IMG/VR virus record: IMGVR_UViG_3300017917_001996
Span: 1-64,000 of that record
Direction: 5' to 3' (one strand)
Length of the DNA stretch: 64,000 nt
In this document: piece after piece, positions 50,387 through 63,549 of the stretch
Position numbering within the stretch: the first letter of the stretch is position 1
Layout of the letters: every line of letters begins with the position of its first letter
The notes under the pieces: generated by a model
What the model saw: the letters and a program-made list of their open reading frames with translations, nothing else
Databases searched by the model: none
What the model was told of the DNA's origin: nothing
Position numbers and translations under genes: made by a program

Positions 50387-50673
50387 CTAATTTAATTAAA
50401 AATACATTTTCTTGGATTAAGGATGACTGGGCATCTCACCGTTTACGTTTTATTGTTGAGTTGCTTGCCTGGGGCATTAGTATCGGCTGTAGTATCACTA
50501 TGGCTCTCACGGTTCCTAATCCACCCCTACTTGCGCTTTATCCTATCTGGATCGCTGGGTGTGCTATGTATGCTTGGGCTGCTTGGACTAGGAAGTCTTT
50601 TGGCATGCTGGCTAACTACATCTTGCTCACCACCATCGACAGTATTGGGCTAATAAGGATGTTAATTAATTGA
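50383..50673 (+). CDS. Small multi-TM membrane protein
   Basis: Three hydrophobic segments. Confidence 0.65.
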   Translation: MTNLIKNTFSWIKDDWASHRLRFIVELLAWGISIGCSITMALTVPNPPLLALYPIWIAGCAMYAWAAWTRKSFGMLANYILLTTIDSIGLIRMLIN

Positions 50674-53327
50674 GTTACGTTGACGCATTATTTTCCAAAG
50701 ACGAAGACCGCATCTACGTAGTCGAACGTGTAGATGGAAAGAGACTCTACAAGGAGTTTCCGGCCAATTATATTTTTTATTACGATGATCCTCGCGGTAA
50801 ATTCCGTACTATTTACGACACACCAGTTAGTAGATTCAGTACTCGCAGTGGCAAGGAATTTTTTAAAGAACTAAAAATGCACCCAAAAAACAAAGTTTGG
50901 GAAAGTGACGTTAAGCCATTGGTGCGATGCCTAGAAGAAAACTATCTAGGCAAAGATGCCCCAAAGCTAAACGTAGCATTTTTCGATATTGAGGTCGACT
51001 TTGATCCTGTACGTGGATTTAGTCGACCTGAAGATCCTTTTAACCCTGTCACTGCTATCAGTATCTACCTCGATTGGTTAGATAAACTAATTACCTTGGT
51101 GATTGCACCTAAGAGTTATAGTCGAGAATCTGCACAGGAGATTGTTAATAAATTCGACGACTGTTATTTGTTTGATACAGAACAAGATATGATTAACACA
51201 TTCTTGGAACTGATCGACGATGCAGATATCTTAAGCGGTTGGAACTCAGAAGGTTTCGATATTCCGTATATGGTTATGCGGACCACACAGATTCTAAGTA
51301 AAGACGACACACGTCGTTATTGTTTGTGGAATCAATTTCCTAAGAAGCGCACATTCGAACGATTCGGTGCAGAGAACATTACATTCGACCTAATCGGTCG
51401 TGTGCACATGGACTATATGCAACTGTATCGCAAGTACACTTATGAAGAACGTCACAGCTATAGTCTAGACGCCATTGGCGAATATGAACTAGACGAACGC
51501 AAGACGCAGTATGAAGGTACACTAGATCAGCTATACAACAAAGACTTTCCTAAGTTTATTGAATATAACAGACAGGATACTTTGCTGTTAGCCAAGCTAG
51601 ATAAGAAGTTAAGATTCATTGACCTAGCCAACGAACTGGCACATGATAACACTGTGCTGTTGCCCACTGTTATGGGTGCTGTGGCTGTTACCGAGCAGGC
51701 AATTATCAATGAAGCGCATCAAAGAGGTTTAGTTGTTCAAAATAGGAGTAGTTCAGATGACCAAGACACGCAAGCGGCAGGTGCCTACGTTGCTTATCCC
51801 AAAAGAGGCATGCACGAATACATCGGAGCAATTGACATCAACTCGCTCTATCCCTCGGCTATTCGTGCCCTTAACATGGCACCAGAAACAATCGTCGGAC
51901 AACTCAGACCAACGCTCACTGACCACTACATAAATGAAAAGATGGCCAATGGCTCCAGCTTTGCTGATGCCTGGGAAAACATGTTTGGCAGTTTAGAATA
52001 TACTGCTGTTATGAACATGGAGCCAGGCACCGAATTAACTGTAGACTGGGAAGGCGGTGGGTCAGATACAATGAGTGCCAAAGACATTTGGCATTTAATC
52101 TTTGAAGGGAACCAACCTTGGATTCTTAGTGCCAATGGTACTATTTTTAAATATGATGCTAAAGGTGTAGTACCAGGATTATTGGAGCGTTGGTATGCAG
52201 AACGTAAAGAACTTCAGGCTAAAAAGAAAGATGCTACAACTGCTGAAGAAAAGGCCTTTTGGGACAAGCGACAGTTGGTTAAGAAAATTAACCTTAATTC
52301 ACTGTATGGCGCTATTCTTAATCCTGGATGTCGTTTTTTTGATAAGCGTATTGGTCAAAGTACAACCTTAACAGGTCGTGTTATTGCACGTCATATGGAT
52401 GCATTTGTTAATGAATGCATTACAGGCGTTTATGATCACGTTGGTGAAGCTGTTATCTATGGCGACACTGACTCTGTTTATTTCAGTGCATGGCCTGCTG
52501 TTAAAGATGATGTCGAAGCTGGGCGTATGCCTTGGAACAAAGACATTTGCGTACAACTTTACGATCAGATTGCTGAACAGGTAAACGATAGCTTTCCTGC
52601 GTTTATGGAACGTGCATTTCGTTGTCCAAGACCAATGGGCAGTCTTATCAAAGGTGGTCGTGAATTGGTTGCAGAGAAAGGCCTGTTCATTAAGAAAAAG
52701 CGTTATGCTGTATTGATTTACGATCTAGAAGGTAATCGTCTAGACAAAGATGGCAAGCCAGGCAAGGTCAAGGCTATGGGTCTAGATCTTAAAAGGAGTG
52801 ATACACCTAAGGTTGTGCAAGACTTCTTAAGTGACTTGCTCTTAAAGGTACTCACTGGTTCGCCCAAAGAAGTTGTCTATGAGCAGGTTAAAGAATTTAA
52901 GATCTTATTCCAAGATCGACCTGCTTGGGAGAAAGGCACACCTAAGCGTGTTAACAATTTGACTAAGTTTAGTGAAGCCGAAGCGAGGCAAGGTCGTGCT
53001 AACATGCCAGGTCATGTTCGAGCAGCTATCAATTGGAATACATTGAAGCGTATGCACAGTGACAACTATAGCATGGCTATTGTAGACGGTATGAAAACGG
53101 TTGTGTGTAAACTCAAGCCTAATCCACTAGGCTTTACCAGCGTGGGTTATCCTACAGACGAAACACACATACCAGACTGGTTCAAGGAATTGCCATTCGA
53201 CGACGGCTTAATGGAAACAACTATTGTAGACCAGAAAGTCGAAAACCTATTAGGTGTGCTAGACTGGAATATCAGCGAGCACACTGAAACTAAAAACACA
53301 TTCAATGACTTGTTTAGCTTTGATTAA
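50670..53327 (+). CDS. Family B DNA polymerase (T4 gp43-like)
   Basis: Exonuclease FDIEV and WNSEGFD; polymerase DINSLYPS, KINLNSLYG, YGDTDS, KKRY. Confidence 0.97.
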   Translation: MSYVDALFSKDEDRIYVVERVDGKRLYKEFPANYIFYYDDPRGKFRTIYDTPVSRFSTRSGKEFFKELKMHPKNKVWESDVKPLVRCLEENYLGKDAPKLNVAFFDIEVDFDPVRGFSRPEDPFNPVTAISIYLDWLDKLITLVIAPKSYSRESAQEIVNKFDDCYLFDTEQDMINTFLELIDDADILSGWNSEGFDIPYMVMRTTQILSKDDTRRYCLWNQFPKKRTFERFGAENITFDLIGRVHMDYMQLYRKYTYEERHSYSLDAIGEYELDERKTQYEGTLDQLYNKDFPKFIEYNRQDTLLLAKLDKKLRFIDLANELAHDNTVLLPTVMGAVAVTEQAIINEAHQRGLVVQNRSSSDDQDTQAAGAYVAYPKRGMHEYIGAIDINSLYPSAIRALNMAPETIVGQLRPTLTDHYINEKMANGSSFADAWENMFGSLEYTAVMNMEPGTELTVDWEGGGSDTMSAKDIWHLIFEGNQPWILSANGTIFKYDAKGVVPGLLERWYAERKELQAKKKDATTAEEKAFWDKRQLVKKINLNSLYGAILNPGCRFFDKRIGQSTTLTGRVIARHMDAFVNECITGVYDHVGEAVIYGDTDSVYFSAWPAVKDDVEAGRMPWNKDICVQLYDQIAEQVNDSFPAFMERAFRCPRPMGSLIKGGRELVAEKGLFIKKKRYAVLIYDLEGNRLDKDGKPGKVKAMGLDLKRSDTPKVVQDFLSDLLLKVLTGSPKEVVYEQVKEFKILFQDRPAWEKGTPKRVNNLTKFSEAEARQGRANMPGHVRAAINWNTLKRMHSDNYSMAIVDGMKTVVCKLKPNPLGFTSVGYPTDETHIPDWFKELPFDDGLMETTIVDQKVENLLGVLDWNISEHTETKNTFNDLFSFD

Positions 53328-53393: not shown

Positions 53394-54128
53394 ATGAAAG
53401 ACCATCTTATGGACATCGTTCAACACACCCATGCACTAGGTGTGATTGATCTTATTAAAATCTCTGGAACTGCACAAGAAACTTCTATTAACGCAGTGGC
53501 TGAAGACCGTACTGTAGTGCTAGACGCTACCTTCCACGGTCCTGTTGCTGAGTTTATTGGTACATTTGGTATGCCCAACCTAGGCAAGCTAAACACCATT
53601 TTGAATATTCCCGAGTACAAGGAAGATGCAGTATTTACTATTACCCGCCAAAAGGACGACGCCGGTGATATGGTTCCTGCAGGTATCCATTTTGAAAACA
53701 AGGTCGGCGACTTTAAGAACGACTACCGTTTCATGGCAGCTAAGATTGTCAACGACAAAGTTAAGAACGTAAAGTTCAAAGGCGTTAAGTGGGGTGTAGA
53801 GTTTGAACCTACTGCGTTGGGTATTCAGCGTTTTGCTTTCCAAAGTCAAGCCAACAGTGAAGAAAGTACTTTTATTGCCAAGACTGAAGGGTCGGATCTA
53901 AAGTTCTTCTTTGGTGATACTAGCAGTCATGCAGGTAACTTTGTGTTTGCCAGCAACATCAGTGGTTCGGTTACCAAAGGTTGGTTGTGGCCAGTTGCAG
54001 TAGTTAAGAGCATTCTTAGCCTGCCTGGAGACAAGGTCATGCGTTTTAGTGACGAAGGTGCTGCACAGATTACTGTCGACAGTGGTATTGCAGTTTATAA
54101 CTATACATTACCTGCACAGCAGAAATGA
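53394..54128 (+). CDS. Probable DNA sliding clamp (gp45/PCNA-like)
   Basis: 244-aa beta-rich protein directly after the polymerase, ending YNYTLPA; a clamp loader is present in the window. Confidence 0.6.
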   Translation: MKDHLMDIVQHTHALGVIDLIKISGTAQETSINAVAEDRTVVLDATFHGPVAEFIGTFGMPNLGKLNTILNIPEYKEDAVFTITRQKDDAGDMVPAGIHFENKVGDFKNDYRFMAAKIVNDKVKNVKFKGVKWGVEFEPTALGIQRFAFQSQANSEESTFIAKTEGSDLKFFFGDTSSHAGNFVFASNISGSVTKGWLWPVAVVKSILSLPGDKVMRFSDEGAAQITVDSGIAVYNYTLPAQQK

Positions 54129-54466
54129 TTAAACATATAGTAGCAGGACCCGGTGTTAGTGTAACCGGGTCCTTTAGTACTCCATATATTAGTCCAGGCT
54201 CGCAGAGCGCTGGTATGATAAGGTACAATACTAGCTCACAGAACACAGAAGTCTACGACGGTAACAGTTGGCTCACAATGAGTTCTAATCCTAGCATTTC
54301 CTTAAGCAACGACACCATGGAAGTTTTAGACTGGGCAAGAAAAAAGATGCAGGAAGAAAAGCAGCTCGAAGACTTAATGAACCAGCACCCTGGGCTTCGA
54401 GACCTACACGAAAAGTTTGAACTAATGCGGGCATTATGCCAGACAGACAAAGAGAATGCAAGATAA
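54125..54466 (+). CDS. Hypothetical protein
   Basis: Translationally coupled ORF. Confidence 0.65.
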   Translation: MIKHIVAGPGVSVTGSFSTPYISPGSQSAGMIRYNTSSQNTEVYDGNSWLTMSSNPSISLSNDTMEVLDWARKKMQEEKQLEDLMNQHPGLRDLHEKFELMRALCQTDKENAR

Positions 54467-56015
54467 TTTAACTAGCAAACAAAACGATTACGCTGTATTT
54501 CTTCCGGCTATCAGCGGATTCTATGCTACCTTTATAGGCAAGCAACGCAACGAACAGTATGTAGATCCTGCACGATTTCCGCAGGGTCTGACAGATATGG
54601 AACAACTCAATTGGTTGAACAGTTCCAAAGGTTTGTTTACATATCGTTGGAGTCTATATTCAGGTGGTCATGCTAACTTGGATCTCGCTAAACAAGATTG
54701 GAGCGAGGATATGGTGCGTAACCGTGAGCCAGGTACATTTATCCTAGGCGACTCTGGTGGATTCCAGATTGCCAAAGGTCTGTGGGAAGGTGACTGGAAA
54801 GCTAACAGTGGTTGCCCTCGGGCGCAAAAGAAGCGAGAGCTTATTCTAAACTGGTTAGACAATGTTGCTGACTACGGAATGATCCTTGATATTCCTACCT
54901 GGGTTATTCACGATAAGAAAGCCAGTAAGGCTTGCCAAATTACTACACTGCAAGAAGCTGTAGATGCCACTAAGTTTAACAACGAGTACTTTATGAAACA
55001 CCGTAAGGGTGTAAAGAATGGTGGTGCTCGTTTCTTAAATGTGTTGCAAGGTGACAATCATACCAGTGCTGAAGAATGGTATCAGACCATGAAGCACTAT
55101 TGCGATCCTAACCTGTATCCAGACACACATTTTGATGGTTGGGCCATGGGCGGTCAGAACATGTGTGATGTACACTTGGTTCTCAAGCGTCTAGTGGCCT
55201 TGCGCTATGACAACTTGTTACAAGAAGGAAAACATGATTGGATGCACTTCTTAGGCACAAGTAAACTAGAGTGGGCAGTTCTATTAACTGTTATTCAACG
55301 AGCTGTAAGAAAATATGTCAACCCGAATTTTACTATTAGTTTTGATTGTGCAAGCCCTTTCTTGGCCACAGCTAATGGCCAAGTCTACCACCACATCGAC
55401 TTACCACATCAAGAAAAGTGGTGCTATAGAATGAGTCCTAGCGTTGACGATAAAAAATACGCCACTGACACACGAAAGTATAGTGACGTAATTGTTAACG
55501 ACGGCTATGTTAAGCACTTTGATGAAAGTCCTATTAGTCAACTGCTCAAGGTCAAAGATATTTGTATCTACAAGCCCGGAGATCTAAATAAGATTGGTAA
55601 AGAAGGTAAGACTTCCTGGGATAGTTTCAGTTATGCACTGTTAATGGGTCATAATGTTTGGACACACATCGAAGCTGTGCAACGTGCTAACAGAGAGTTT
55701 GACGCAGGTACGTGGCCTTACATGATGCAACACGATGGCAGCGATCACGAATTCTTTGCTGACATTGTAGATCGTATTTTTGCTGCGCCAACTCGTGAAG
55801 CTGCCATGGAGATCATTGATAGTCCTAAGTATGCGCGACACAATGGTTATTGGAATCAAATCATTGGCACACGAGGATTTAAAGGTAAGAACACAGTTAA
55901 TGCCAATACTATGTTTAATAACTTGTTTGAAATCTCAGATGGCAACGACGAGGACAGCGTTGACTTTAGCGAAGATGTTTTAGATAACCTAGAGCAAGAA
56001 CAAAAGGAACAATAA
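54456..56015 (+). CDS. TGT-fold 7-deazaguanine DNA transglycosylase (DpdA-like)
   Basis: LGDSGGFQ, MILDIP, VLQG, MHFLG, SFDCAS; clustered with QueD-like and folE genes. Confidence 0.8.
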   Translation: MQDNLTSKQNDYAVFLPAISGFYATFIGKQRNEQYVDPARFPQGLTDMEQLNWLNSSKGLFTYRWSLYSGGHANLDLAKQDWSEDMVRNREPGTFILGDSGGFQIAKGLWEGDWKANSGCPRAQKKRELILNWLDNVADYGMILDIPTWVIHDKKASKACQITTLQEAVDATKFNNEYFMKHRKGVKNGGARFLNVLQGDNHTSAEEWYQTMKHYCDPNLYPDTHFDGWAMGGQNMCDVHLVLKRLVALRYDNLLQEGKHDWMHFLGTSKLEWAVLLTVIQRAVRKYVNPNFTISFDCASPFLATANGQVYHHIDLPHQEKWCYRMSPSVDDKKYATDTRKYSDVIVNDGYVKHFDESPISQLLKVKDICIYKPGDLNKIGKEGKTSWDSFSYALLMGHNVWTHIEAVQRANREFDAGTWPYMMQHDGSDHEFFADIVDRIFAAPTREAAMEIIDSPKYARHNGYWNQIIGTRGFKGKNTVNANTMFNNLFEISDGNDEDSVDFSEDVLDNLEQEQKEQ

Positions 56016-56521
56016 TGGATAGAGATCCAATTAACGGTGAAAAGTTTTTCACTGGCATAGAAGTTGAACATACTCCAGCATACGGAAAGCAAACTCTGTT
56101 TGTTGTTGGTGTTCAACCAGTGGAACAAATTGCAAAGAATTTGCAAGGGTGCGAACACATCTATTTTGGTGCCAACATGAGTTTTCCTAAATTAGGTGTC
56201 AACGACGGTGGTGCATGGAGAGAGTGGGAACAGATGATTATTCCTTTCCTTAAAAAAGATTATCTGTGCACCCTAGATGTCGATATTACTTGTGTCGAAG
56301 GCCTAGTCGAAGGCGGCTTGCCCGAATATTATAATTTTATTCCGATGATTTCGGCTAAGTTACCTTACATTGGTCTACTAGGTTATAACGCTACTCTAAA
56401 ACTAGACGACAAAGGTTTCCAGGCATCCAATCCGGGTGTTTGGTGCCATAGCATTCATAGTCTGCAGGACCGACAAGTATTTACCCCGTGGAATTGTTAC
56501 GAAGAAGATAAAGGTGTATGA
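56015..56521 (+). CDS. Hypothetical protein of the modification cluster
   Basis: TAATG-coupled to the DpdA-like gene; GIEVEHTP, HIYFGANMSF. Confidence 0.65.
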   Translation: MDRDPINGEKFFTGIEVEHTPAYGKQTLFVVGVQPVEQIAKNLQGCEHIYFGANMSFPKLGVNDGGAWREWEQMIIPFLKKDYLCTLDVDITCVEGLVEGGLPEYYNFIPMISAKLPYIGLLGYNATLKLDDKGFQASNPGVWCHSIHSLQDRQVFTPWNCYEEDKGV

Positions 56522-57099
56522 TGTCTATCAAAGTTAAAAAAATCAAAACCAAACTTATCGGCCAGACTTTGCCGTTTTCCGACAACTCGAAAAATGCAAG
56601 ATACTGCGAAAGGTTTCTTATTAACGAAGGTTGGAGTATCGACCAAAATGCTAAAGGTCCAGATGTAAAAAAAGATAACCTTGTGCTCGAATTTAAGTTA
56701 AAAGATATCGAAAGTGAATCTGCGTTTACAATTGGTAAAATTACTTTTGACGCTCTTAAAAATATAAGTTACAATAAATCACACATAAAAGAAAAACTTC
56801 AACAACTTTGTATTATCGAGCACAAGGATAAGGTCGTGTTAAATGCCAACGTCTACGACTTGTCTGATTCATTTATACAAGGTTTACTCGAAGAGGCATT
56901 TGACGAAGCAAGAGAACTTATCGTTGACGGTTACGCATCAAACTATATTCCTGGAAATAGATTCGGGTATTTTGAAAGGACTGACAAGCATCCAAACATT
57001 TATGCATTCCGAATTAGAAAAAATATTATGAACACTACAATCAAGGCAATGTCTAGATCTTCTGACAACTTTAACAAACATTTCGAAATAGTAGATTAA
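56518..57099 (+). CDS. PD-(D/E)xK restriction-endonuclease-like protein
   Basis: E...GPDV...LEFKLK catalytic pattern. Confidence 0.55.
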   Translation: MMSIKVKKIKTKLIGQTLPFSDNSKNARYCERFLINEGWSIDQNAKGPDVKKDNLVLEFKLKDIESESAFTIGKITFDALKNISYNKSHIKEKLQQLCIIEHKDKVVLNANVYDLSDSFIQGLLEEAFDEARELIVDGYASNYIPGNRFGYFERTDKHPNIYAFRIRKNIMNTTIKAMSRSSDNFNKHFEIVD

Positions 57100-57100
57100 A

Positions 57101-57553
57101 ATGGACCAACATCAACAGGCTCAACAAGAAAAAAGACAGCGTATTAAAAACGCTGCACATAGAATGATTTTTGTTACCTTTCAGAAAGAAGGTATTCACA
57201 TGTACCCAGCGGCAGCTACTGACCCTGCACTAAAGACAGGCGACCAGTATGATGTTAGCTTTCTAGGAACTCCACATCGTCACATCTTTCATTTTAATGT
57301 GGCGATTGAAGTATTTCACAATGACAGAGATTTGGAATTTATACAGGTTAAACGCTGGCTAGAGAACCTCTATGCCGGTGGTACACTTGAACTGAATTAC
57401 AAGAGTTGTGAAATGATTAGCGACGACCTCTATGAAGTTATTGCTACTCGATATCCCGATCGTAATATCGAAATTACTGTGTCCGAAGATAATGAAAACG
57501 GCGCTACGATTTATTACAACACAACTGAACCTTATCAAAAACTCGCTATTTAA
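57101..57553 (+). CDS. QueD/PTPS-like T-fold enzyme
   Basis: EGIH, PHRHIFHF, SCEMIS, VSED. Confidence 0.75.
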   Translation: MDQHQQAQQEKRQRIKNAAHRMIFVTFQKEGIHMYPAAATDPALKTGDQYDVSFLGTPHRHIFHFNVAIEVFHNDRDLEFIQVKRWLENLYAGGTLELNYKSCEMISDDLYEVIATRYPDRNIEITVSEDNENGATIYYNTTEPYQKLAI

Positions 57554-57568
57554 AAGGAATTAAACAAA

Positions 57569-57805
57569 ATGGCAAAAGATTTTAAAAAGTATTTCGTTAT
57601 GAAACCCGAAGTTACTCGTATCTTTGACGAGTTGGATCGCTATCGCCAATTCTGCATAGAATTTGGCTATGTGTTTAACGAGGCTCATTTAGGTAATGAT
57701 CATAGTCCGTATAACGATTTCCAAAGATACCAACAAGGTAGGAATCCCCGTGACAATTGGGGTTGGGCTATCAAACAAGGGCGCCGTAACTACGTTGAGA
57801 ATTAA
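57569..57805 (+). CDS. Hypothetical protein
   Basis: AAGGA RBS. Confidence 0.65.
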   Translation: MAKDFKKYFVMKPEVTRIFDELDRYRQFCIEFGYVFNEAHLGNDHSPYNDFQRYQQGRNPRDNWGWAIKQGRRNYVEN

Positions 57806-57833
57806 TAATGCGTAAGTTTTGTCATTAGAACCT

Positions 57834-57881
57834 TATAAAATCCTTCTTGTAATATAAATACATTATGCGGAGGATTTTATA
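57834..57881 (+). promoter_or_regulatory. RBS-sequestering hairpin with a late promoter TATAAATA at its loop
   Basis: TATAAAATCCT/AGGATTTTATA stem covers GGAGG and the A of ATG; TATAAATA at 57853-57860. Confidence 0.8.
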
Positions 57882-58615
57882 TGGGTAAACGAACACATGG
57901 AAAAAATACTGAAATAGTTCTTGCAGAAATAAAAAAAATACACGGCGAAAAATTTCTTTACGACAAATTTCAGTATGTAAATTGCAAAACTAAAGTTAGT
58001 GTTGGTTGCAAAGTTCACGGTTATTTCGAAAAATACCCTAACGATTTGAAAAGAATCAATGGAGGTTGCCCTCGTTGCAACAATAGTTTTTTTAAAACAG
58101 ATAATGAATTTAAAGTTGAACTACTGAATAAATTTCCGAATTATATGTATGATGGAACATATAAAAATGCTAAAACAAAATTATTTTTTACATGTTTGGA
58201 ACATCAACATAGTTTTAGTTCAACACCAAATTCTATATTACTCGGACATACAGGATGCATAGATTGTTATGCAAACAAACAAATACAAACTAGAGTACTC
58301 AAAGGACAAATGACCGACCCATTATTAAAATCAGACTATGAAAATTATAGACGTGCTGTATGGAAATTTTCAAATAGGTCATTCAAAAAATATATGACTG
58401 GACAAAAAAGAGATAGACAAAATCACTTAGACCATATACTATCGATAGTAGATGGGTATAATAATAAAGTTCCTGCAGAGATTGTTGGAAGCATTCATAA
58501 CCTAAGAATTATAAGTGGTACATCCAATAGAAATAAGAGTTATAAAAGCTATATATCGGTAGAAGAATTGCTTGAAAGGTTTAATAATGAGAAAATTATT
58601 GTACATGGGGCTTGA
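57881..58615 (+). mobile_element. Zn-finger/HNH homing endonuclease
   Basis: CKVHG...CPRC, CLEH...CIDC, HLDHILS...NLRII...NRNK. Confidence 0.8.
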
Positions 58616-59798
58616 AAAATATAAGTCCCGTTACACGTATCAATTGCAAGAATGGAATCGTGCAGTGTTCGAACGTAGGGGCATCAACTACGTTATCGTC
58701 CCAGGTGAAACACTGAGTAACGATCAAGCCATTGTTACAGGACAAGTATTAGATGCACATGGCCGCACATACTTTGGTATGAGTCAGCTAATGAACCTGG
58801 TACGTATGATGAAGGCAGGAGAAGTTACCAATGAAGATGTTATCTACTTTGAAGACATGTTTCAACCCGGTATCGAAAGTCTACCTTACATATTTGATCA
58901 AATCCCTAGTAATCTACGGCCCCGTGTGTATGTTCGCTGTCTTGCTCAGTCCATTGATCCTGACGATTTTGTACATGTATGGGGTATGGCGAAGTGGATG
59001 GGACTCTACGAACAAATGGTTAATGAATTCGTGGACGGAGTTCTCGCCTCGAACGAAGAAATGGTTGCTCATATGCGTATTGCTGGATGGCGTGCTCCTA
59101 TCTACAATATTTCTGGCCTAGCATTTGGTAAGGACGAAGTTATCGGTAGGGTCGGTGGACTAGACCGCATCCAGGACTTTAGGACTCGTAGTTATCGTGT
59201 AGGCTTTGCTGCTCGCTGGGATCAAGAAAAGCAACCCGACTTTTACATGGACTTAATTGAAGCATATAATTCTCACAAGGCCCAACTCAAGCAAACACAC
59301 GAAATTACATTACCTGATGTAGAATTTGCTGTGTATAGCGGCGGTAAACTAAAGAGCAACAACGATAGTTACATGCAACGTACACGTTCTATGCAAGAGC
59401 AAGGTTTGCTTACTGTATACGAGGACTTAGAAAAAAATGACTACTATAATCTGCTTAATGATACTCGCGTGTTGTTCAATTGTGCTTTACAAGACTGGGT
59501 TAGCAACACGGTATCCGAGGCTGATGCTCTTGGGTGCAATGTACTATATCCTGCTTATCGTAGCTTCCCCGAGACTTTCAGCAACGACCCAGAGCGACTA
59601 TACGTACCCTGGAGCATACCAGATGCGTTGGACAAGTTGCTGAAACTGCTTAAAGAGCCACATAAGAACCAAGGTAAAATTAGTGATTGGACCAATGGCA
59701 CTGTTGATCGTATTTGCGATATTATGGATGGTAAAGGCGAGCAATGGCTACGTATGAGTACAGATTACCGTAAACATACAAACGAATCCAAATTTTAA
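58587..59798 (+). CDS. GT-B glycosyltransferase, possibly DNA-modifying
   Basis: FAARWDQEKQP, QDWVSNTVSEA, YRSFPE. Confidence 0.75.
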   Translation: MRKLLYMGLEKYKSRYTYQLQEWNRAVFERRGINYVIVPGETLSNDQAIVTGQVLDAHGRTYFGMSQLMNLVRMMKAGEVTNEDVIYFEDMFQPGIESLPYIFDQIPSNLRPRVYVRCLAQSIDPDDFVHVWGMAKWMGLYEQMVNEFVDGVLASNEEMVAHMRIAGWRAPIYNISGLAFGKDEVIGRVGGLDRIQDFRTRSYRVGFAARWDQEKQPDFYMDLIEAYNSHKAQLKQTHEITLPDVEFAVYSGGKLKSNNDSYMQRTRSMQEQGLLTVYEDLEKNDYYNLLNDTRVLFNCALQDWVSNTVSEADALGCNVLYPAYRSFPETFSNDPERLYVPWSIPDALDKLLKLLKEPHKNQGKISDWTNGTVDRICDIMDGKGEQWLRMSTDYRKHTNESKF

Positions 59799-59824
59799 CT
59801 AAATATAGTATATAGGTGATTAAA

Positions 59825-60130
59825 ATGAAAAGACTTGGATCAATTTTAGGTTTAGCAGTTTTAATAGCAGTACTACCTGCTTGTGCTCAACATCACCATC
59901 ATCAGCATCCTGCATATCGTCACTATAATCATAGCCATAGTCACAATAGTTGGATTGCACCTTTTATACTCGGTGCAGGTGCCACTTATATACTAACTCG
60001 CCCAGCACAACCTGCTGTTCAACCACAAATTGTTATACAGCCAGGGCAGCATATCATTTGTCAACCCGTTCAGGTATACAATTCGTACCGAGGTATGTAC
60101 GAAATCCGACAACAATGTTGGGCACAATAA
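59825..60130 (+). CDS. His-rich small exported protein
   Basis: Signal peptide, HHHHQH, hydrophobic WIAPFILG segment. Confidence 0.6.
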   Translation: MKRLGSILGLAVLIAVLPACAQHHHHQHPAYRHYNHSHSHNSWIAPFILGAGATYILTRPAQPAVQPQIVIQPGQHIICQPVQVYNSYRGMYEIRQQCWAQ

Positions 60131-60134
60131 TTAG

Positions 60135-60158
60135 AGCAACCGCAAGGTTGCTTTTTTT
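60135..60158 (+). terminator. Intrinsic terminator
   Basis: AGCAACC-GCAA-GGTTGCT-TTTTTT. Confidence 0.88.
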
Positions 60159-60182
60159 ATTCTGTCAAGCTAAAATATTTCC

Positions 60183-61163
60183 ATGAACAAACGAGTTATT
60201 ATTACCGGAGCCATGGGCTTCATTGGTAGCCATACCGCCAAAATATTTAAGGAAGCCGGTTATCACGTTATCGGTGTTGACCACGCCCAGACCATACCAC
60301 AAGCGTCAATATATATAGATCAACTGTTTACTGATGACTTTGTCAAAATTACTGCCGCGGCTGCGACAGTCAACGACGTTGATGCAATTATTCATTGCGC
60401 CGGTACAAGCCTAGTAGGCCCAAGTATTAAACATCCTCACTTATATTTTTGGAACAACGGCTGTAAAACAAACGATCTGCTCGAAGGCTTACAAAAAAAC
60501 AATTGGCATGGTAAGTTTATCTTTAGTAGCAGTGCTGCCGTCTATGGCGTACCCGAAGGTAACAGGCCATTATTTGAAACAGATCACTTAGCGCCTATTA
60601 GTCCGTACGGAAAAAGTAAATGGATCTGTGAAGAAATAATTCACGATCATTGCCATGCACACAAATTCAAAGGCATTGCTTTACGTTACTTTAATGCCAG
60701 CGGTTGCGACCCAGATGGAACATTAGGCCATGTCATTGACGATACCCACATGATTCCTAGAGTATTAAGTGCATATCGACGCGGCGAAACATTTACCCTT
60801 TATGGCAATGACTACAGCACCCGAGATGGCACTTGTGTTCGAGATTATCTACACGTTGTTGATATTGCAAGAGCACATTTAGAAGCAGTATGTCTAGCTG
60901 ATTCTATGCTCAAAGGCGAATTCCGTGCTTACAATTTAGGTACTGGCCAAGGGCATAGTAATAAAGAAATTATCTGGTCTTGTAATTGGGCTGTTAGAGA
61001 TAAGATTAATTTCGTTATCGGTCCTAGACGCATCGGCGATCCAGATTATCTAGTTGCCAACAGCGATTGTTTTCAACAAGATACAAGTTGGCGTCCGGAT
61101 AATAGCAGTATTGAAAATATTGTAACCACAGCCTGGGCTTGGGAACGTAAACATGGGTCTTAA
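60183..61163 (+). CDS. galE: UDP-glucose 4-epimerase
   Basis: TGAMGFIGSH, FSSSAAVYG, YGKSK, LRYFN, DGTCVRDYLHV. Confidence 0.9.
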   Translation: MNKRVIITGAMGFIGSHTAKIFKEAGYHVIGVDHAQTIPQASIYIDQLFTDDFVKITAAAATVNDVDAIIHCAGTSLVGPSIKHPHLYFWNNGCKTNDLLEGLQKNNWHGKFIFSSSAAVYGVPEGNRPLFETDHLAPISPYGKSKWICEEIIHDHCHAHKFKGIALRYFNASGCDPDGTLGHVIDDTHMIPRVLSAYRRGETFTLYGNDYSTRDGTCVRDYLHVVDIARAHLEAVCLADSMLKGEFRAYNLGTGQGHSNKEIIWSCNWAVRDKINFVIGPRRIGDPDYLVANSDCFQQDTSWRPDNSSIENIVTTAWAWERKHGS

Positions 61164-61167
61164 TACC

Positions 61168-61196
61168 TTGACTACGCAATCTAAATACTGTACAAT
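61168..61196 (+). promoter_or_regulatory. Sigma70-like promoter with nested CTAAATA
   Basis: TTGACT-N17-TACAAT. Confidence 0.7.
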
Positions 61197-61239
61197 TAAT
61201 ATAACGACATCCTCGTCGTAAACTCGGAGAAAAACTATA

Positions 61240-61323
61240 ATGACTGAAAAAAATCTAGCACAAGTCCTTCGCGAACGCATGAAGGCCAACGGCAAACGAT
61301 TCTGGGCCGGTGATAATGTATAA
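61240..61323 (+). pseudogene. N-terminal remnant of a displaced phage-type folE
   Basis: GGAG RBS; MTEKNLAQVLRERMKANGKRFWAGDNV*, truncated where TATAAATA begins. Confidence 0.6.
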
Positions 61324-61389
61324 ATACCATTGCTACACAAAGGTAGCAAACTTTTTAAAATTAACATCCGTGTAAGGAAGGATACAAAT

Positions 61390-62073
61390 ATGTCGTATAA
61401 CAAAACAAAAACCGACCCAGTATTGGGTAAAGCAGTACATGAGCATTTGGTAAAATGTGGTGTAGAAACTCCTACAGTTCCTAACGACATTGATCGTAAA
61501 GACAAGATTGAGCAGATCGAAAGTCACTTTACAGAAATCATGAAGATAATGGGCCTGGATCTCAACGACGACAGTTTAATCGAAACACCCAAGCGTGTGG
61601 CAAAAATGTATGTCAATGAAATCTTTTGGGGGTTGGACTACGAAGCATTTCCAAAATGCACAGCAGTAGAAAACAAAATGAAGTACGATGAAATGGTCAT
61701 TGAACGCAACGTCAATGTTCAGAGTAACTGTGAACATCACTTTGTTGTAATTGATGGACTAGCAACTGTGGCCTATATTCCTAATCAAAAGGTTTTAGGT
61801 CTTAGCAAAATCAATCGTGTAGTGGAATACTTCTCTAAGCGTCCGCAGATTCAAGAACGATTAACTGAACAGATCTATCACGCACTACAATACATTCTTG
61901 GCACAGACAATATCGCTGTAGTTGTCGATGCTCAACACTATTGTGTGAAAAGTCGAGGTGTTGAAGATGTCGGATCAAGTACAGTCACCAGCAAGTTAGG
62001 TGGTGTATTTAAATCCGATCCTGCTGTGCGTAACGAGTTTATGAACATTGTTAATGCTTGTAAAACAAAATAA
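61390..62073 (+). CDS. folE: GTP cyclohydrolase I
   Basis: ETPKRVAKMY, SNCEHH, GLSKINR, RPQIQERLT, HYCVKSRG. Confidence 0.95.
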   Translation: MSYNKTKTDPVLGKAVHEHLVKCGVETPTVPNDIDRKDKIEQIESHFTEIMKIMGLDLNDDSLIETPKRVAKMYVNEIFWGLDYEAFPKCTAVENKMKYDEMVIERNVNVQSNCEHHFVVIDGLATVAYIPNQKVLGLSKINRVVEYFSKRPQIQERLTEQIYHALQYILGTDNIAVVVDAQHYCVKSRGVEDVGSSTVTSKLGGVFKSDPAVRNEFMNIVNACKTK

Positions 62074-62074
62074 G

Positions 62075-62680
62075 TTATCTACCTAAAAACTTATAATCGT
62101 ATCTCTTTTTAAGTAGATACGGTGTAGTGTTAAAATGTCGTGATGCGGCTCCTATAGTAGGAAAGGTTATGCCTTCGACTACTATAGGGCGAACATTAGG
62201 ATTGTTATTATTTTGACTCATCCTTTTTCGCTGTGCTGGATCTTTCATTGGATTGTTTTCTACCATGCGTTTACGAACTTGTTCAATAATTTCTGGTGTA
62301 GAAAAAATGTTATCTTTCCCTCTTTTGTAAGATCCTCGGGCTTTACGAGTAGCAGACATCTTAACATACGATTCCGGAGTGCAGTATATTTGTGGGGTTG
62401 GACACTTGGAAGTATCATACTTGGCATTAAACAATTTATAGGCATACATCATTCTGTATCGGTTTGCACCCTTAACCATTTCAATTAACAGTCTATGACA
62501 TACTCTGTGTTCTTTGTAGGTAAGCACCACAAGATTACTCGGATCATCTGTGCCGCCAAATGACCGTGGAATGATGTGATGCGTTTGAAATCCATCATTT
62601 CGTTCTTTAAGGTGATTACGCTGAATAGAACGATTGATTATTCTATAATAAACCTTGGTGTATTTGTTATCTAAAAACAT
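62075..62680 (-). mobile_element. HNH homing endonuclease
   Basis: HHIIPRSFGGTDDPSNLVVLTYKEHRVCH; C-terminal DNA-binding-like repeats. Confidence 0.85.
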
Positions 62681-62871: not shown

Positions 62872-63549
62872 ATGACCGCTATTGTTTATCGAGGTGCTGC
62901 TGCTATTAACCAAGCCATGGGCCGTGTCTATGGACACATGGCTGCGGCTATTTTTACCAGCATGGTTATTAGTTATCTAGTAGGAACTTCCGCTGCATTG
63001 ATGGAATTTTTCTTTACTGGATTTACCAAGTGGGTTGTAATCTTTGCACCCTTGGCATTTATATTTTTAGTTCCTATTTTGCTCAATGCAGGACTTCCTA
63101 AAATCGGTAAGGTGCTGACCTTGCACGCCTTTGCTGGCCTTATGGGCTTGAGCTTTGCCACTATCTTTGCAGTCTACACCATGGGCAGTATTGTTAGTGC
63201 ATTTATGAGTGGTGCCGTGTTGTTTGGGGTTATGAGCTTGTATGGTTACTTTACCAAGCAGAGCCTAGACAGCCTTGGCAAGTATTTGCTAGTAGGCCTA
63301 ATTGCAATTATCATTGCCAGCATTATCAATATCTTTGTTGGCAGCACTGTAGCACAAATGGTAATCAGCGCCATTGCTATTCTTATCTTCCTGGGCCTTA
63401 CTGCCTACGATACACAACAAATTAGAGAAATGGTAATGACTGACTCCGACGACAGTGTTGAGATTTCTGGTGCGCTAACTTTGTATCTGGATTTCATTAA
63501 CTTGTTCCTGAGTCTGCTGCAACTATTCGGAAATAAAAAGGATGATTAA
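62872..63549 (+). CDS. Bax inhibitor-1/YccA family membrane protein
   Basis: 7 TM helices; TAYDTQQI, GALTLYLDFINLFLSLL. Confidence 0.92.
   Translation: MTAIVYRGAAAINQAMGRVYGHMAAAIFTSMVISYLVGTSAALMEFFFTGFTKWVVIFAPLAFIFLVPILLNAGLPKIGKVLTLHAFAGLMGLSFATIFAVYTMGSIVSAFMSGAVLFGVMSLYGYFTKQSLDSLGKYLLVGLIAIIIASIINIFVGSTVAQMVISAIAILIFLGLTAYDTQQIREMVMTDSDDSVEISGALTLYLDFINLFLSLLQLFGNKKDD

What the first reader, a model, noticed from the sequence alone, without database searches (positions are those of the whole stretch)
54456..62073. 7-deazaguanine DNA-modification cluster with a glycosyltransferase and galE: possible sugar-hypermodified base
Seen: right after the polymerase and clamp lie a DpdA/TGT-like gene, a coupled unknown protein (56015), a QueD-like gene, a GT-B glycosyltransferase, galE and folE. 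queE and queC are not visible in this window. Known: FolE and QueD start 7-deazaguanine synthesis, and DpdA proteins insert these bases into phage DNA. Inference: GalE could supply UDP-galactose or a related sugar that the glycosyltransferase attaches to the inserted base, giving a glycosylated deazaguanine. The 56015 protein is a candidate missing enzyme.
Basis: partly seen in the sequence, partly recalled or inferred. Interest (0 to 1): 0.75.

Follow-up and report, generated by a model that had tools for sequence, protein, structure and literature searches.

The report
Deazaguanine DNA-modification cluster with conserved glycosyltransferase
This jumbo-phage locus is a real 7-deazaguanine DNA-modification cluster of the decarboxylase (DpdL) type, and its glycosyltransferase sits beside the same genes in seven distant phage lineages, so the final DNA base may be a new sugar-bearing deazaguanine.

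Summary
The window is the first 64 kb of a 250-kb viral record that shares gene order with Pseudomonas phage PA5oct.

- **DpdA-like gene (54456-56015).** It matches no library family. It has a confident TGT fold, the catalytic Asp pattern, and profile-level homology to the ACP17/BUDD DpdA family.
- **"QueD-like" gene (57101-57553).** It is DpdL, the predicted 7-carboxy-7-deazaguanine (CDG) decarboxylase, with the exact LxxxHRHxF motif.
- **Other pathway genes.** The true QueD, a MazG and QueE lie just outside the window, at 66.5-68.5 kb. QueC, QueF and any hydroxymethylase were not found in the 250 kb held.
- **Glycosyltransferase (58587-59798).** It is GT4-like and a conserved core member of the cluster. 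It is present in 51 of 51 close relatives. It also lies next to DpdL or DpdA in PA5oct, ACP17, Phosso, BUCT-ZZ01, BUDD/X1 and BCSR5. It is absent from phiST, whose DNA carries plain 7-deazaguanine.
- **GalE.** It is genuine but accessory: 11 of 33 relatives have it, and the genome has other glycan modules it could serve.
- **56015 protein.** It has an unknown fold and is optional (12 of 66 relatives).

The predicted base is a 7-deazaguanine derivative. Sugar attachment is plausible (about 45%) but unproven, and no acceptor site is evident. I found no published description of the glycosyltransferase link.

The parts
50670..53327 (+). B-family DNA polymerase; a conserved upstream neighbour of the cluster
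   Evidence: PF00136 at 122 bits and PF03104 at 78 bits. The same gene order is seen in PA5oct, Phosso, L011 and L012.
53394..54128 (+).
   Evidence: No Pfam match. Homologues hold the same position in PA5oct (annotated as a structural protein), Vibrio phage 2.275.O and relatives. Present in 66 of 66 relatives.
54456..56015 (+). Large, divergent DpdA-like DNA guanine transglycosylase (TGT fold). It is the predicted inserter of the deazaguanine base.
   Evidence: No Pfam, NCBIfam or PHROG match. The AF2 model has pLDDT 89. Foldseek against PDB gives 181 matches at E<=1e-3, and the 50 listed are all tRNA-guanine transglycosylase at probability 1.0. hhalign against the ACP17/BUDD/BUCT-ZZ01 DpdA family gives 97.8%, E 9.5e-13. 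D99, H264 and D297 are invariant and D145 nearly invariant across 53 diverse homologues. The family has 940 clusters at 50% identity. Present in 66 of 66 relatives.
56015..56521 (+). 168-aa protein of unknown fold; an optional companion of the cluster
   Evidence: No family match. AF2 pLDDT 76, with no PDB match at E<0.1. The only AFDB match is an unnamed homologue. The ACP17 homologue lies directly upstream of that phage's DpdA, and the PA5oct copy is 28 kb away. Present in 12 of 66 relatives.
56518..57099 (+). 193-aa ORF; a lineage-specific insertion of unknown function
   Evidence: No family match. Found in 2 of 66 relatives.
57101..57553 (+). DpdL: a QueD paralogue and the predicted 7-carboxy-7-deazaguanine decarboxylase
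   Evidence: 54% identical to ACP17 ASD50405 and 34% to the phiST DpdL. The motif LGTPHRHIF equals LxxxHRHxF as defined in PMC10516641. phrog_17812 at 1.8e-33.
57569..57805 (+). 78-aa conserved small protein lying between DpdL and the glycosyltransferase
   Evidence: Present in 50 of 51 relatives at the same position. No recognisable features.
57881..58615 (+). Homing-endonuclease-like insertion
   Evidence: phrog_681 and phrog_559 endonuclease matches. Present in only 3 of 80 related loci.
58587..59798 (+). GT4-like (GT-B) glycosyltransferase; a conserved core member of the DpdL-type cluster
   Evidence: PF13524 at 20.8 bits, below cut-off. The 63%-identical BUCT-ZZ01 homologue and the BUDD homologue pass the Pfam Glycos_transf_1 cut-offs. 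A profile search hits GT4 structures, best 7ec7 at E 2e-4. Homologous to ACP17 ASD50404 (4e-12) and PA5oct gp317 (6e-10). Present in 51 of 51 relatives. Adjacent to DpdL or DpdA in six reference phages. The ATG at 58587 is the likely start.
60183..61163 (+). UDP-glucose 4-epimerase (GalE); an accessory gene
   Evidence: TIGR01179 at 286.8 bits against a cut-off of 262.3. PF01370 at 3e-44. Orthologues sit next to the glycosyltransferase in 11 of 33 relatives.
61330..62073 (+). GTP cyclohydrolase I (FolE); the first step of deazaguanine synthesis
   Evidence: NF006824 at 331 bits and PF01227 at 211 bits. Present in 40 of 40 relatives.

Best explanation
The locus is the front half of a DpdL-type 7-deazaguanine DNA-modification system of a jumbo phage.

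Shown:
- FolE (in the window) plus QueD and QueE (just outside it) are the enzymes that make 7-carboxy-7-deazaguanine (CDG) from GTP.
- No QueC was found, so preQ0 is not expected.

Inferred by homology:
- DpdL removes the carboxyl group to give 7-deazaguanine, as proposed for Cellulophaga phage phiST, whose DNA carries dDG in place of all dG.
- The 519-aa TGT-fold protein swaps guanine in phage DNA for the deazaguanine base. It would do this by the two-aspartate double-displacement mechanism of TGT and DpdA.
- MazG may clean up or deplete dGTP.

Inferred from conserved gene neighbourhood only:
- The GT4-like glycosyltransferase works in the same pathway. The most likely role is adding a hexose or HexNAc from a UDP-sugar to the deazaguanine, on the base or on DNA. 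The final base would then be a further-modified, sugar-bearing derivative and not plain dDG.
- GalE, where present, would widen or secure the UDP-sugar supply.

The biological role is protection of phage DNA from restriction. The related phage PA5oct has restriction-resistant, G-modified DNA.
For: - Gene identities: (FolE, GalE, QueD, QueE, MazG).
- DpdL: with the motif definition in PMC10516641.
- TGT fold and homology to phage DpdA.
- This DpdA-like family lies beside deazaguanine genes of different pathway variants. In PA5oct it is with QueE. In Vibrio phage 2.275.O it is with QueF, QueC and FolE.
- Absences in the 250 kb: QueC, QueF, ThyA-type hydroxymethylase.
- Glycosyltransferase linkage within the clade: 51 of 51 relatives.
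- Glycosyltransferase linkage across lineages. It abuts DpdL in PA5oct, ACP17, Phosso and BUCT-ZZ01. It abuts DpdA in BUDD. It lies 2.7 kb from DpdL in BCSR5. These genomes are 156-469 kb.
- In Phosso the glycosyltransferase stays with DpdL, FolE and QueE although the DpdA-like gene is 173 kb away.
- The EX7E-type motif of GT4 enzymes is kept, as DX7E in this clade.
- phiST, the only DpdL phage with proven plain dDG, has no such glycosyltransferase.
- Other lineages add sugar- or activation-type accessory genes to the same cluster: a second GT4, a truncated epimerase, a weak PIG-L-like deacetylase match and a PAPS-reductase-like protein.
- PA5oct DNA resists G-site restriction enzymes and is targeted by nucleases that sense modified G (PMC12191111).
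- dpdA plus dpdL of ACP17 alone gave no dDG in E. coli, and the authors say other enzymes may be needed (PMC10516641).
Against: - 7-deazaguanine has no hydroxyl group, so there is no obvious O-glycosylation site. Any attachment would be unprecedented for DNA: an ester on CDG, a C-glycoside at C7 or C8, or an N-glycoside at N2.
- DpdL's decarboxylase activity has never been shown in vitro.
- The DpdA-like protein lacks the conserved CxCxxC...H zinc site of TGT and bacterial DpdA. It matches no curated TGT model.
- Six DpdL-bearing phage lineages have no such glycosyltransferase.
- GalE is missing from most relatives, and the genome has other glycosyltransferase modules that could use it.
- The DpdA-glycosyltransferase complex prediction gave no answer.
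- No chemical data exist for this phage.
Confidence: 0.45

Rival explanations
1. The phage makes plain 2'-deoxy-7-deazaguanosine (dDG), as phiST does. The glycosyltransferase and GalE act on something other than DNA, such as virion proteins, host envelope glycans, or the modification enzymes themselves. They are merely co-located with early genes.
For: - The FolE, QueD, QueE, DpdL and MazG gene set matches phiST, where dDG replaces all dG (PMC10516641).
- 7-deazaguanine lacks a sugar acceptor hydroxyl.
- The genome has two further glycan modules, at 191.6-195.6 kb and 226.7-231 kb.
- GalE is present in only 11 of 33 relatives.
Against: - The glycosyltransferase sits immediately beside DpdL or DpdA in seven lineages with otherwise different gene orders, and in 51 of 51 relatives.
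- phiST itself lacks it.
- ACP17 dpdA plus dpdL were not sufficient for dDG in E. coli.
Confidence: 0.3
2. The glycosyltransferase acts before insertion, on a soluble precursor. One form is a pteridine glycosyltransferase working with FolE and a PTPS-like enzyme to make a pterin glycoside. Another is glycosylation of the free deazapurine base or nucleotide, as a carrier or a storage or activation step.
For: - Pteridine glycosyltransferases are GT4-like enzymes that act after FolE and PTPS (PMC5683033, PMC4133829).
- The tightest linkage of the glycosyltransferase is to DpdL, a PTPS/QueD paralogue, and not to DpdA. Phosso shows this.
- BUCT-ZZ01 infects Synechococcus elongatus PCC 7942, and papers on the BGluT tetrahydrobiopterin glycosyltransferase also mention Synechococcus (the link between the two was not read out here).
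- PA5oct and BUCT-ZZ01 carry phosphoribosyltransferases in the cluster, which hints at chemistry on the free base.
Against: - No sepiapterin-reductase-type step was identified.
- QueE and a TGT-fold enzyme point to deazaguanine in DNA.
- No phosphoribosyltransferase was found in this genome.
- No specific similarity to pteridine glycosyltransferases was shown.
Confidence: 0.12
3. The deazaguanine is incorporated during replication, as a modified dNTP. Base to nucleotide would go through a phosphoribosyltransferase and kinases, with MazG removing dGTP. The TGT-fold protein would then have a different role.
For: - MazG is in the cluster.
- Phosphoribosyltransferases are present in the PA5oct and BUCT-ZZ01 clusters.
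- The cluster sits next to the DNA polymerase.
Against: - No phosphoribosyltransferase was found in the 250 kb held for this phage.
- A TGT-fold enzyme with the catalytic Asp pattern is universally present (66 of 66 relatives).
- Published work now favours post-replicative insertion for all known cases (PMC10516641).
Confidence: 0.08

Closest known systems
Cellulophaga phage phiST dDG system (FolE, QueD, QueE, DpdL, DpdA3, MazG; Cui et al. 2023, PMC10516641)
   Same: It has the same biosynthetic gene set without QueC. Its DpdL is homologous and carries the LxxxHRHxF motif. It has a MazG, and its cluster also lies beside the replicative polymerase.
   Different: The phiST inserter is a 259-aa DpdA3 with no detectable pairwise similarity to the 519-aa protein. 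phiST has no GT4 glycosyltransferase, no GalE and no 168-aa protein.
Pseudomonas phage PA5oct (Wroclawvirus) gp316-gp322 cluster
   Same: The order is the same: polymerase, conserved 244-aa protein, large DpdA-like protein (35% identical), GT4 glycosyltransferase, DpdL (59%), then QueE. Its DNA is experimentally restriction-resistant at G-containing sites.
   Different: PA5oct adds a phosphoribosyltransferase and a truncated epimerase. Its DpdL motif reads HFH, not HRH. Its copy of the 168-aa protein is 28 kb away. The chemistry of its modified G is unpublished in the papers held.
Acidovorax phage ACP17 cluster (FolE, 168-aa homologue, DpdA, GT, DpdL, QueE)
   Same: It has the same four-gene core, including the 168-aa protein directly upstream of DpdA. 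Its DpdA family is homologous at profile level.
   Different: Its DpdA belongs to a different subfamily (424 aa, about 20% identity). It has no GalE. Its dpdA plus dpdL gave no dDG in E. coli.
Bacterial DpdA and tRNA-guanine transglycosylase (TGT)
   Same: They share the TIM-barrel TGT fold and three conserved aspartates in the same order (PMC10164549).
   Different: The 519-aa protein has no conserved zinc-binding cysteines, a long helical C-terminal extension, and no DpdB partner. It is not recognised by PF01702.
Glycosyltransferases that decorate modified bases in nucleic acids (T4 alpha/beta-glucosyltransferases on 5hmC; QTMAN on queuosine in tRNA)
   Same: The logic is the same: a GT-B enzyme is encoded with, or acts after, a base-modification pathway. 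QTMAN is a GT4-type enzyme that acts on a 7-deazaguanine derivative. A language-model search ranked a bacterial QTMAN cluster 54th among look-alikes.
   Different: Those enzymes glycosylate a hydroxyl group, on hydroxymethyl or cyclopentenediol. No such hydroxyl is predicted here. There is no match to QTMAN_N (PF12038), and T4 glucosyltransferases did not appear in the PDB profile search.

Membership tests
DpdA / TGT superfamily (DNA or tRNA guanine transglycosylases) | (beta/alpha)8 TIM-barrel TGT fold | tested here: met
   AF2 model with pLDDT 89. Foldseek against PDB gives 181 matches at E<=1e-3. The 50 listed are all TGT at probability 1.0, with TM about 0.5 by target.
DpdA / TGT superfamily (DNA or tRNA guanine transglycosylases) | Three invariant active-site aspartates: general acid/base, base recognition and nucleophile. 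These are Asp95, Asp130 and Asp256 in S. Montevideo DpdA (PMC10164549). | tested here: inconclusive
   D99 (GDSGGFQ) and D297 (SFDC) are invariant and D145 (LDIP) nearly invariant in 53 diverse homologues, in the right order. The same motifs align with the ACP17/BUDD DpdA family. Residue-by-residue superposition on a solved TGT or DpdA was not available, so the equivalence rests on motif likeness.
DpdA / TGT superfamily (DNA or tRNA guanine transglycosylases) | Structural zinc site CxCxxC...H, conserved in TGT and bacterial DpdA (PMC10164549) | tested here: not met
   No cysteine is invariant or nearly invariant in the 53-sequence family alignment.
DpdA / TGT superfamily (DNA or tRNA guanine transglycosylases) | Match to curated models (Pfam PF01702 TGT, NCBIfam) | tested here: not met
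   No match in Pfam or NCBIfam. No PF01702 match in the whole genome at E<=1. The profile against PDB sequences finds no TGT.
DpdA / TGT superfamily (DNA or tRNA guanine transglycosylases) | Homology to a phage protein already treated as DpdA, and co-location with deazaguanine synthesis genes | tested here: met
   hhalign gives 97.8%, E 9.5e-13 against the ACP17/BUDD/BUCT-ZZ01 family. BUDD's member is annotated as queuine tRNA-ribosyltransferase. The family lies next to QueE, DpdL, FolE, QueF or QueC in PA5oct, Vibrio phage 2.275.O and 66 of 66 relatives.
DpdA / TGT superfamily (DNA or tRNA guanine transglycosylases) | Guanine-for-deazaguanine exchange activity on DNA | not testable with these tools
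   Needs the purified protein and a [14C]guanine exchange assay or LC-MS.
DpdL (predicted CDG decarboxylase, QueD paralogue) | Signature LxxxHRHxF replacing QueD's CxxxHGH (PMC10516641) | tested here: met
   LGTPHRHIF at residues 55-63.
DpdL (predicted CDG decarboxylase, QueD paralogue) | Sequence homology to the named DpdL of phiST and ACP17 | tested here: met
   tblastn gives 54% identity, 1e-36 to ACP17 and 34%, 1e-7 to phiST. phmmer gives 5.7e-40 and 2.7e-12.
DpdL (predicted CDG decarboxylase, QueD paralogue) | Genome encodes FolE, QueD, QueE and a DpdA but not QueC | tested here: met
   The record is about 71% complete, so the absence of QueC is not absolute.
DpdL (predicted CDG decarboxylase, QueD paralogue) | Decarboxylation of CDG | not testable with these tools
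   Never demonstrated for any DpdL.
GT4-like (GT-B, Glycos_transf_1) glycosyltransferases | Match to Pfam Glycos_transf_1 or Glyco_trans_1_4 above cut-off | tested here: inconclusive
   The window protein has only PF13524 at 20.8 bits, below the cut-off of 25. Its 63%-identical BUCT-ZZ01 homologue (28.3 and 26.5 bits) and the BUDD homologue (45.7 bits) pass. The family profile hits GT4 structures at E 2e-4.
GT4-like (GT-B, Glycos_transf_1) glycosyltransferases | C-terminal EX7E motif | tested here: met
   EX7E is kept in ACP17, PA5oct and BUDD. It reads DX7E (D...E316) in the window protein and BUCT-ZZ01. That this motif marks GT4 enzymes is from general knowledge.
GT4-like (GT-B, Glycos_transf_1) glycosyltransferases | Two-Rossmann-domain GT-B fold | not tested
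The Atlas model of a near-identical cluster aligns with GT4 models at TM 0.69-0.74.
GalE (UDP-glucose 4-epimerase) | Equivalog model TIGR01179 above its trusted cut-off | tested here: met
   286.8 bits against a cut-off of 262.3, full length.

The most novel reading that the evidence does not exclude
A widespread group of large phages converts guanine in its DNA into a glycosylated 7-deazaguanine. The group spans uncultured jumbo phages (thousands of metagenomic homologues) and phages of Pseudomonas, Acidovorax, Xanthomonas, Burkholderia, Sinorhizobium and Synechococcus. The enzymes would be a previously unnamed large DpdA subfamily, DpdL and a dedicated GT4 glycosyltransferase. Removing the carboxyl group may free the electron-rich pyrrole carbon for a C-glycosidic bond, or the sugar may be esterified to the carboxyl group. 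Either would be the first sugar-modified purine analogue in any DNA.
Probability: 0.35. Interest if true: 0.9.

Novelty: new variant of a known kind. Interest (0 to 1): 0.72.

Why it matters
All known sugar-bearing DNA bases are pyrimidines: glucosyl- or arabinosyl-5hmC, base J and 5hmU derivatives. All eight known DNA deazaguanines are sugar-free.

A glycosyltransferase that travels with DpdL and DpdA across seven phage lineages points to an undescribed purine hypermodification. It also offers an explanation for why dpdA plus dpdL alone failed to give dDG in E. coli.

The question is directly testable, because PA5oct, ACP17, BUCT-ZZ01, BUDD and Phosso are cultured. PA5oct is a therapy-candidate phage whose modified G is still chemically undefined.

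The inserter family is very large: 940 clusters at 50% identity and more than 7,600 close homologues. No curated model recognises it, so deazaguanine-modified phages are probably under-counted in metagenomes.

Tried and rejected
- **Family libraries.** Pfam, NCBIfam and PHROGs gave nothing for the 519-aa, 168-aa and 193-aa proteins.
- **PDB sequence searches for the 519-aa protein.** phmmer and a 56-sequence profile found no TGT. Only the fold search did.
- **Nucleotide search.** Megablast of the locus against phage genomes found no match.
- **Pairwise BLAST.** Against the phiST DpdA3 there was no similarity. Against the ACP17 DpdA only the DSGG[F/L]Q region matched, at E 0.022.
- **The 168-aa protein.** The Atlas search gave only sub-threshold MATH-domain look-alikes, which I rejected. 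Fold searches gave no known fold. It is not related to Phosso's 'glycosylase'.
- **Split-gene idea.** I tested whether the 168-aa and 193-aa ORFs are halves of the ACP17/PA5oct 345-aa gene. They are not. That gene is the glycosyltransferase.
- **QTMAN lead.** There is no PF12038 match in the genome, so I keep it as an analogy only.
- **Complex prediction.** The DpdA-glycosyltransferase job returned 'no answer' and is not used as evidence.
- **Bakedbeans gp176.** I tested it as a DpdA3-DpdL fusion and found no support.
- **BCSR5 446-aa neighbour.** As a DpdA candidate it reached only 15% probability.
- **Glycosyltransferase in cellular genomes.** A profile scan of genome contigs was not possible. 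The single-protein scan found only near-identical contigs binned into MAGs.
- **Literature.** The supplements of PMC10516641 and the 2024 MMBR review are not held.

Full report
**Context.** The window is bases 1-64000 of a single 250,289-bp viral record, linear, with a CheckV completeness estimate of 71%. No phage genome in the collection is close at nucleotide level. Gene order around the finding matches the jumbo Pseudomonas phage PA5oct: B-family polymerase, a conserved 244-aa protein, a large hypothetical protein, then deazaguanine genes.

**Checking the observation.**
- GalE (60183-61163) passes the equivalog model TIGR01179, at 286.8 bits against a cut-off of 262.3.
- FolE (61330-62073) passes NF006824 at 331 bits.
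- The polymerase is confirmed. The 'clamp' has no family match.
- The 519-aa, 168-aa, 193-aa and 150-aa proteins have no Pfam or NCBIfam match.
- Just past the window's end lie QueD (66519-67016), a cupin, MazG (67269-67673) and QueE (67660-68517).
- QueC, QueF, Pfam TGT, phosphoribosyltransferase, ThyA-type hydroxymethylase and DegT are not found anywhere in the 250 kb.

**The 'DpdA/TGT-like' gene.**
- The protein carries GDSGGFQ and SFDC motifs.
- It belongs to a very large, unannotated family. More than 7,600 close homologues exist, all labelled 'hypothetical'. There are 940 clusters at 50% identity.
- Across 53 diverse members, D99, S100, G102, P147, N195, H264 and D297 are invariant and D145 is nearly so. 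No cysteine is conserved.
- Sequence and profile searches of the PDB find no TGT.
- An AlphaFold model is confident, with pLDDT 89.1 and pTM 0.88.
- Foldseek returns 181 PDB matches at E<=1e-3. The 50 listed are all tRNA-guanine transglycosylase at probability 1.0.
- A profile-profile comparison with the ACP17, BUDD and BUCT-ZZ01 proteins gives 97.8% probability and E 9.5e-13 over the catalytic core. BUDD's member is annotated as queuine tRNA-ribosyltransferase.
- The family profile also hits the ACP17 protein in a genome scan.
- Homologues sit beside QueE and DpdL in PA5oct, and beside QueF, QueC and FolE in Vibrio phage 2.275.O.

I conclude it is a TGT-fold, DpdA-like transglycosylase of a large subfamily. 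The papers I could read do not name this subfamily. It lacks the zinc site that is conserved in TGT and bacterial DpdA (PMC10164549).

**The 'QueD-like' gene is DpdL.** The 150-aa protein is 54% identical to ACP17 ASD50405 and 34% to the phiST protein. Cui et al. named these proteins DpdL, the proposed CDG decarboxylase. It carries their signature exactly: LGTPHRHIF matches LxxxHRHxF. That paper shows that phiST (FolE, QueD, QueE, DpdL, DpdA3, MazG, no QueC) replaces all dG with 2'-deoxy-7-deazaguanosine. The gene set here is the same apart from the type of DpdA.

**The glycosyltransferase.**
- On its own the protein only grazes Pfam, with PF13524 at 20.8 bits.
- Its 63%-identical homologue in Synechococcus phage BUCT-ZZ01 and a homologue in Xanthomonas phage BUDD pass the Glycos_transf_1 cut-offs.
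- The family profile hits GT4 structures.
- The EX7E-type motif is kept.

The key result is its genomic context.
- It is homologous to ACP17 ASD50404 (E 4e-12) and PA5oct gp317 (E 6e-10). Both lie exactly between DpdA and DpdL.
- A profile scan of 13 reference phage genomes found it in PA5oct, ACP17, Phosso, BUCT-ZZ01, BUDD and BCSR5. In each it lies within 0-2.7 kb of DpdL or DpdA.
- In Phosso it stays with DpdL, FolE and QueE, while the DpdA-like gene is 173 kb away.
- It is absent from phiST, RHph_I1_18, Ahp1, Bakedbeans, D479, MA9V-3 and Vibrio phage 2.275.O.
- Counts among 80 IMG/VR relatives, wherever enough flank exists:

| Gene | Present in |
|---|---|
| Glycosyltransferase | 51 of 51 |
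| DpdA-like | 66 of 66 |
| FolE | 40 of 40 |
| QueD | 32 of 33 |

- Five relatives carry a divergent glycosyltransferase at the same position.

As a rough estimate, a gene falling within 3 kb of a given gene in a 150-470 kb genome has a chance of a few percent per lineage. Recurrence in seven lineages with otherwise different neighbours argues for a shared function.

**GalE and the 56015 protein.**
- True GalE orthologues lie beside the glycosyltransferase in only 11 of 33 relatives with enough flank. Eight more have a weaker SDR match 7-8.5 kb away, and 14 have none.
- The genome also holds a 1352-aa GT1+GT2+methyltransferase protein at 191.6-195.6 kb. A module of 2OG oxygenase, methyltransferase, DUF5672, GT9 and GT1 lies at 226.7-231 kb. 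GalE therefore has other possible clients.
- The 168-aa protein is present in 12 of 66 relatives. It has a homologue directly upstream of the ACP17 DpdA and a distant copy in PA5oct.
- Its model (pLDDT 76) matches no known fold.
- GalE and the 168-aa protein tend to occur in the same relatives. That may only reflect shared ancestry.

**Mechanism.**
- Shown: the enzymes for making CDG from GTP are present, and QueC was not found.
- Inferred by homology: DpdL gives 7-deazaguanine. The TGT-fold enzyme exchanges it for guanine in DNA by the Asp-nucleophile mechanism established for TGT and DpdA.
- Inferred from context only: the GT4 enzyme acts in the same pathway.
- I favour sugar transfer to the deazaguanine, so that the final base is heavier than dDG. 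The acceptor atom cannot be named. The options are a glycosyl ester on the CDG carboxyl, a C-glycoside at C7 or C8 of the pyrrole ring, or an N-glycoside at N2. All are without precedent in DNA.
- Accessory genes in sister clusters suggest lineage-specific elaboration of a sugar-containing product. They are:
  - a second GT4 and an XGPRT in BUCT-ZZ01;
  - a phosphoribosyltransferase and a truncated epimerase in PA5oct;
  - a PAPS-reductase-like protein in BUDD;
  - a weak PIG-L deacetylase match in BCSR5;
  - a DegT aminotransferase and an acetyltransferase in close relatives.
- PA5oct DNA resists G-site restriction enzymes and is attacked by nucleases that sense modified G. Its base has not been identified.
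- Cui et al. could not obtain dDG from ACP17 dpdA plus dpdL and suggested that other enzymes are needed. The glycosyltransferase and the 168-aa protein lie directly beside those two genes.

**Rivals.**
- Plain dDG, with the glycosyltransferase and GalE serving protein or envelope glycans.
- A glycosyltransferase acting on a soluble precursor, including a pteridine-glycosyltransferase-like role. Those enzymes are GT4-like and follow FolE and PTPS.
- Pre-replicative incorporation through nucleotides.

The complex prediction for DpdA with the glycosyltransferase gave no answer and is not used.

**Novelty.** The deazaguanine pathway, DpdL and the DpdA concept are known. I found no paper that describes the large PA5oct-type DpdA subfamily or the conserved glycosyltransferase in DpdL clusters. 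The only paper held that mentions DpdL is Cui et al.. I rate it a new variant of a known kind. The chance that it hides a chemically new DNA base is real but unproven.

Noticed in passing
window 56518-57099 and 57881-58615; also 62075-62680 (-): A 193-aa ORF and a 244-aa endonuclease-like ORF (PHROG endonuclease matches) interrupt the cluster. Most relatives lack them (2 of 66, and 3 of 80 loci). A further HNH endonuclease lies just after FolE. They look like homing-endonuclease cargo.
   Followed up: partly
window 59816-60130: A 104-aa histidine-rich protein with a signal-peptide or lipobox-like N-terminus lies between the glycosyltransferase and GalE. None of the 80 related loci has a homologue.
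   Followed up: no
window 62872-63549: A Bax1-I (BI-1/YccA) family membrane protein (PF01027, 167 bits) is conserved at the same place in relatives L011 and L012.
   Followed up: no
G000 191593-195651 and 226725-230950 (L103, L102): The genome holds two further glycan modules. One is a 1352-aa GT1+GT2+FkbM-methyltransferase protein. The other is a run of 2OG-Fe(II) oxygenase, methyltransferase, DUF5672, GT9 and GT1 genes.
   Followed up: partly
G000 74626-77063 (L003 12626-15063): A MoxR-type AAA ATPase sits next to a DUF2201 metallopeptidase/VWA protein. ThyX lies at 78948-79616.
   Followed up: no
L004 12425-13389 (PA5oct gp320, gp321): The PA5oct deazaguanine cluster contains a truncated NAD-epimerase-like protein (N-terminal half only) and a phosphoribosyltransferase. 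BUCT-ZZ01 has an XGPRT and a second GT4 in its cluster (L009 4093-4554 and 6010-7353).
   Followed up: partly
L104 6816-8891 and L007 7989-9638 (Sinorhizobium phage Phosso): In Phosso, DpdL and the glycosyltransferase follow the polymerase and clamp and precede FolE and QueE. The DpdA-like gene lies 173 kb away, so the glycosyltransferase tracks DpdL and not DpdA.
   Followed up: yes
L098 9212-10363 (Vibrio phage Bakedbeans gp176); L101 9395-10276 (Chryseobacterium phage MA9V-3): In both phages the DpdL domain is the C-terminal part of a longer ORF (383 and 293 aa). The N-terminal part of the Bakedbeans ORF is not detectably DpdA3; the MA9V-3 ORF was not compared.
   Followed up: partly
L011 and L012, about 16-21.5 kb (relatives): Close relatives carry an epimerase or dehydratase, a second radical-SAM protein, a DegT-type aminotransferase and a hexapeptide acetyltransferase downstream of the cluster. 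This looks like an amino-sugar pathway that the window phage lacks.
   Followed up: no
L105-L108: The only 'cellular genome' matches to the glycosyltransferase are 63-73% identical copies on contigs binned into Haliscomenobacter, Chitinophagales, Phycisphaerae and Syntrophomonadaceae MAGs. These are probably mis-binned phage contigs, or a hint about the host.
   Followed up: no
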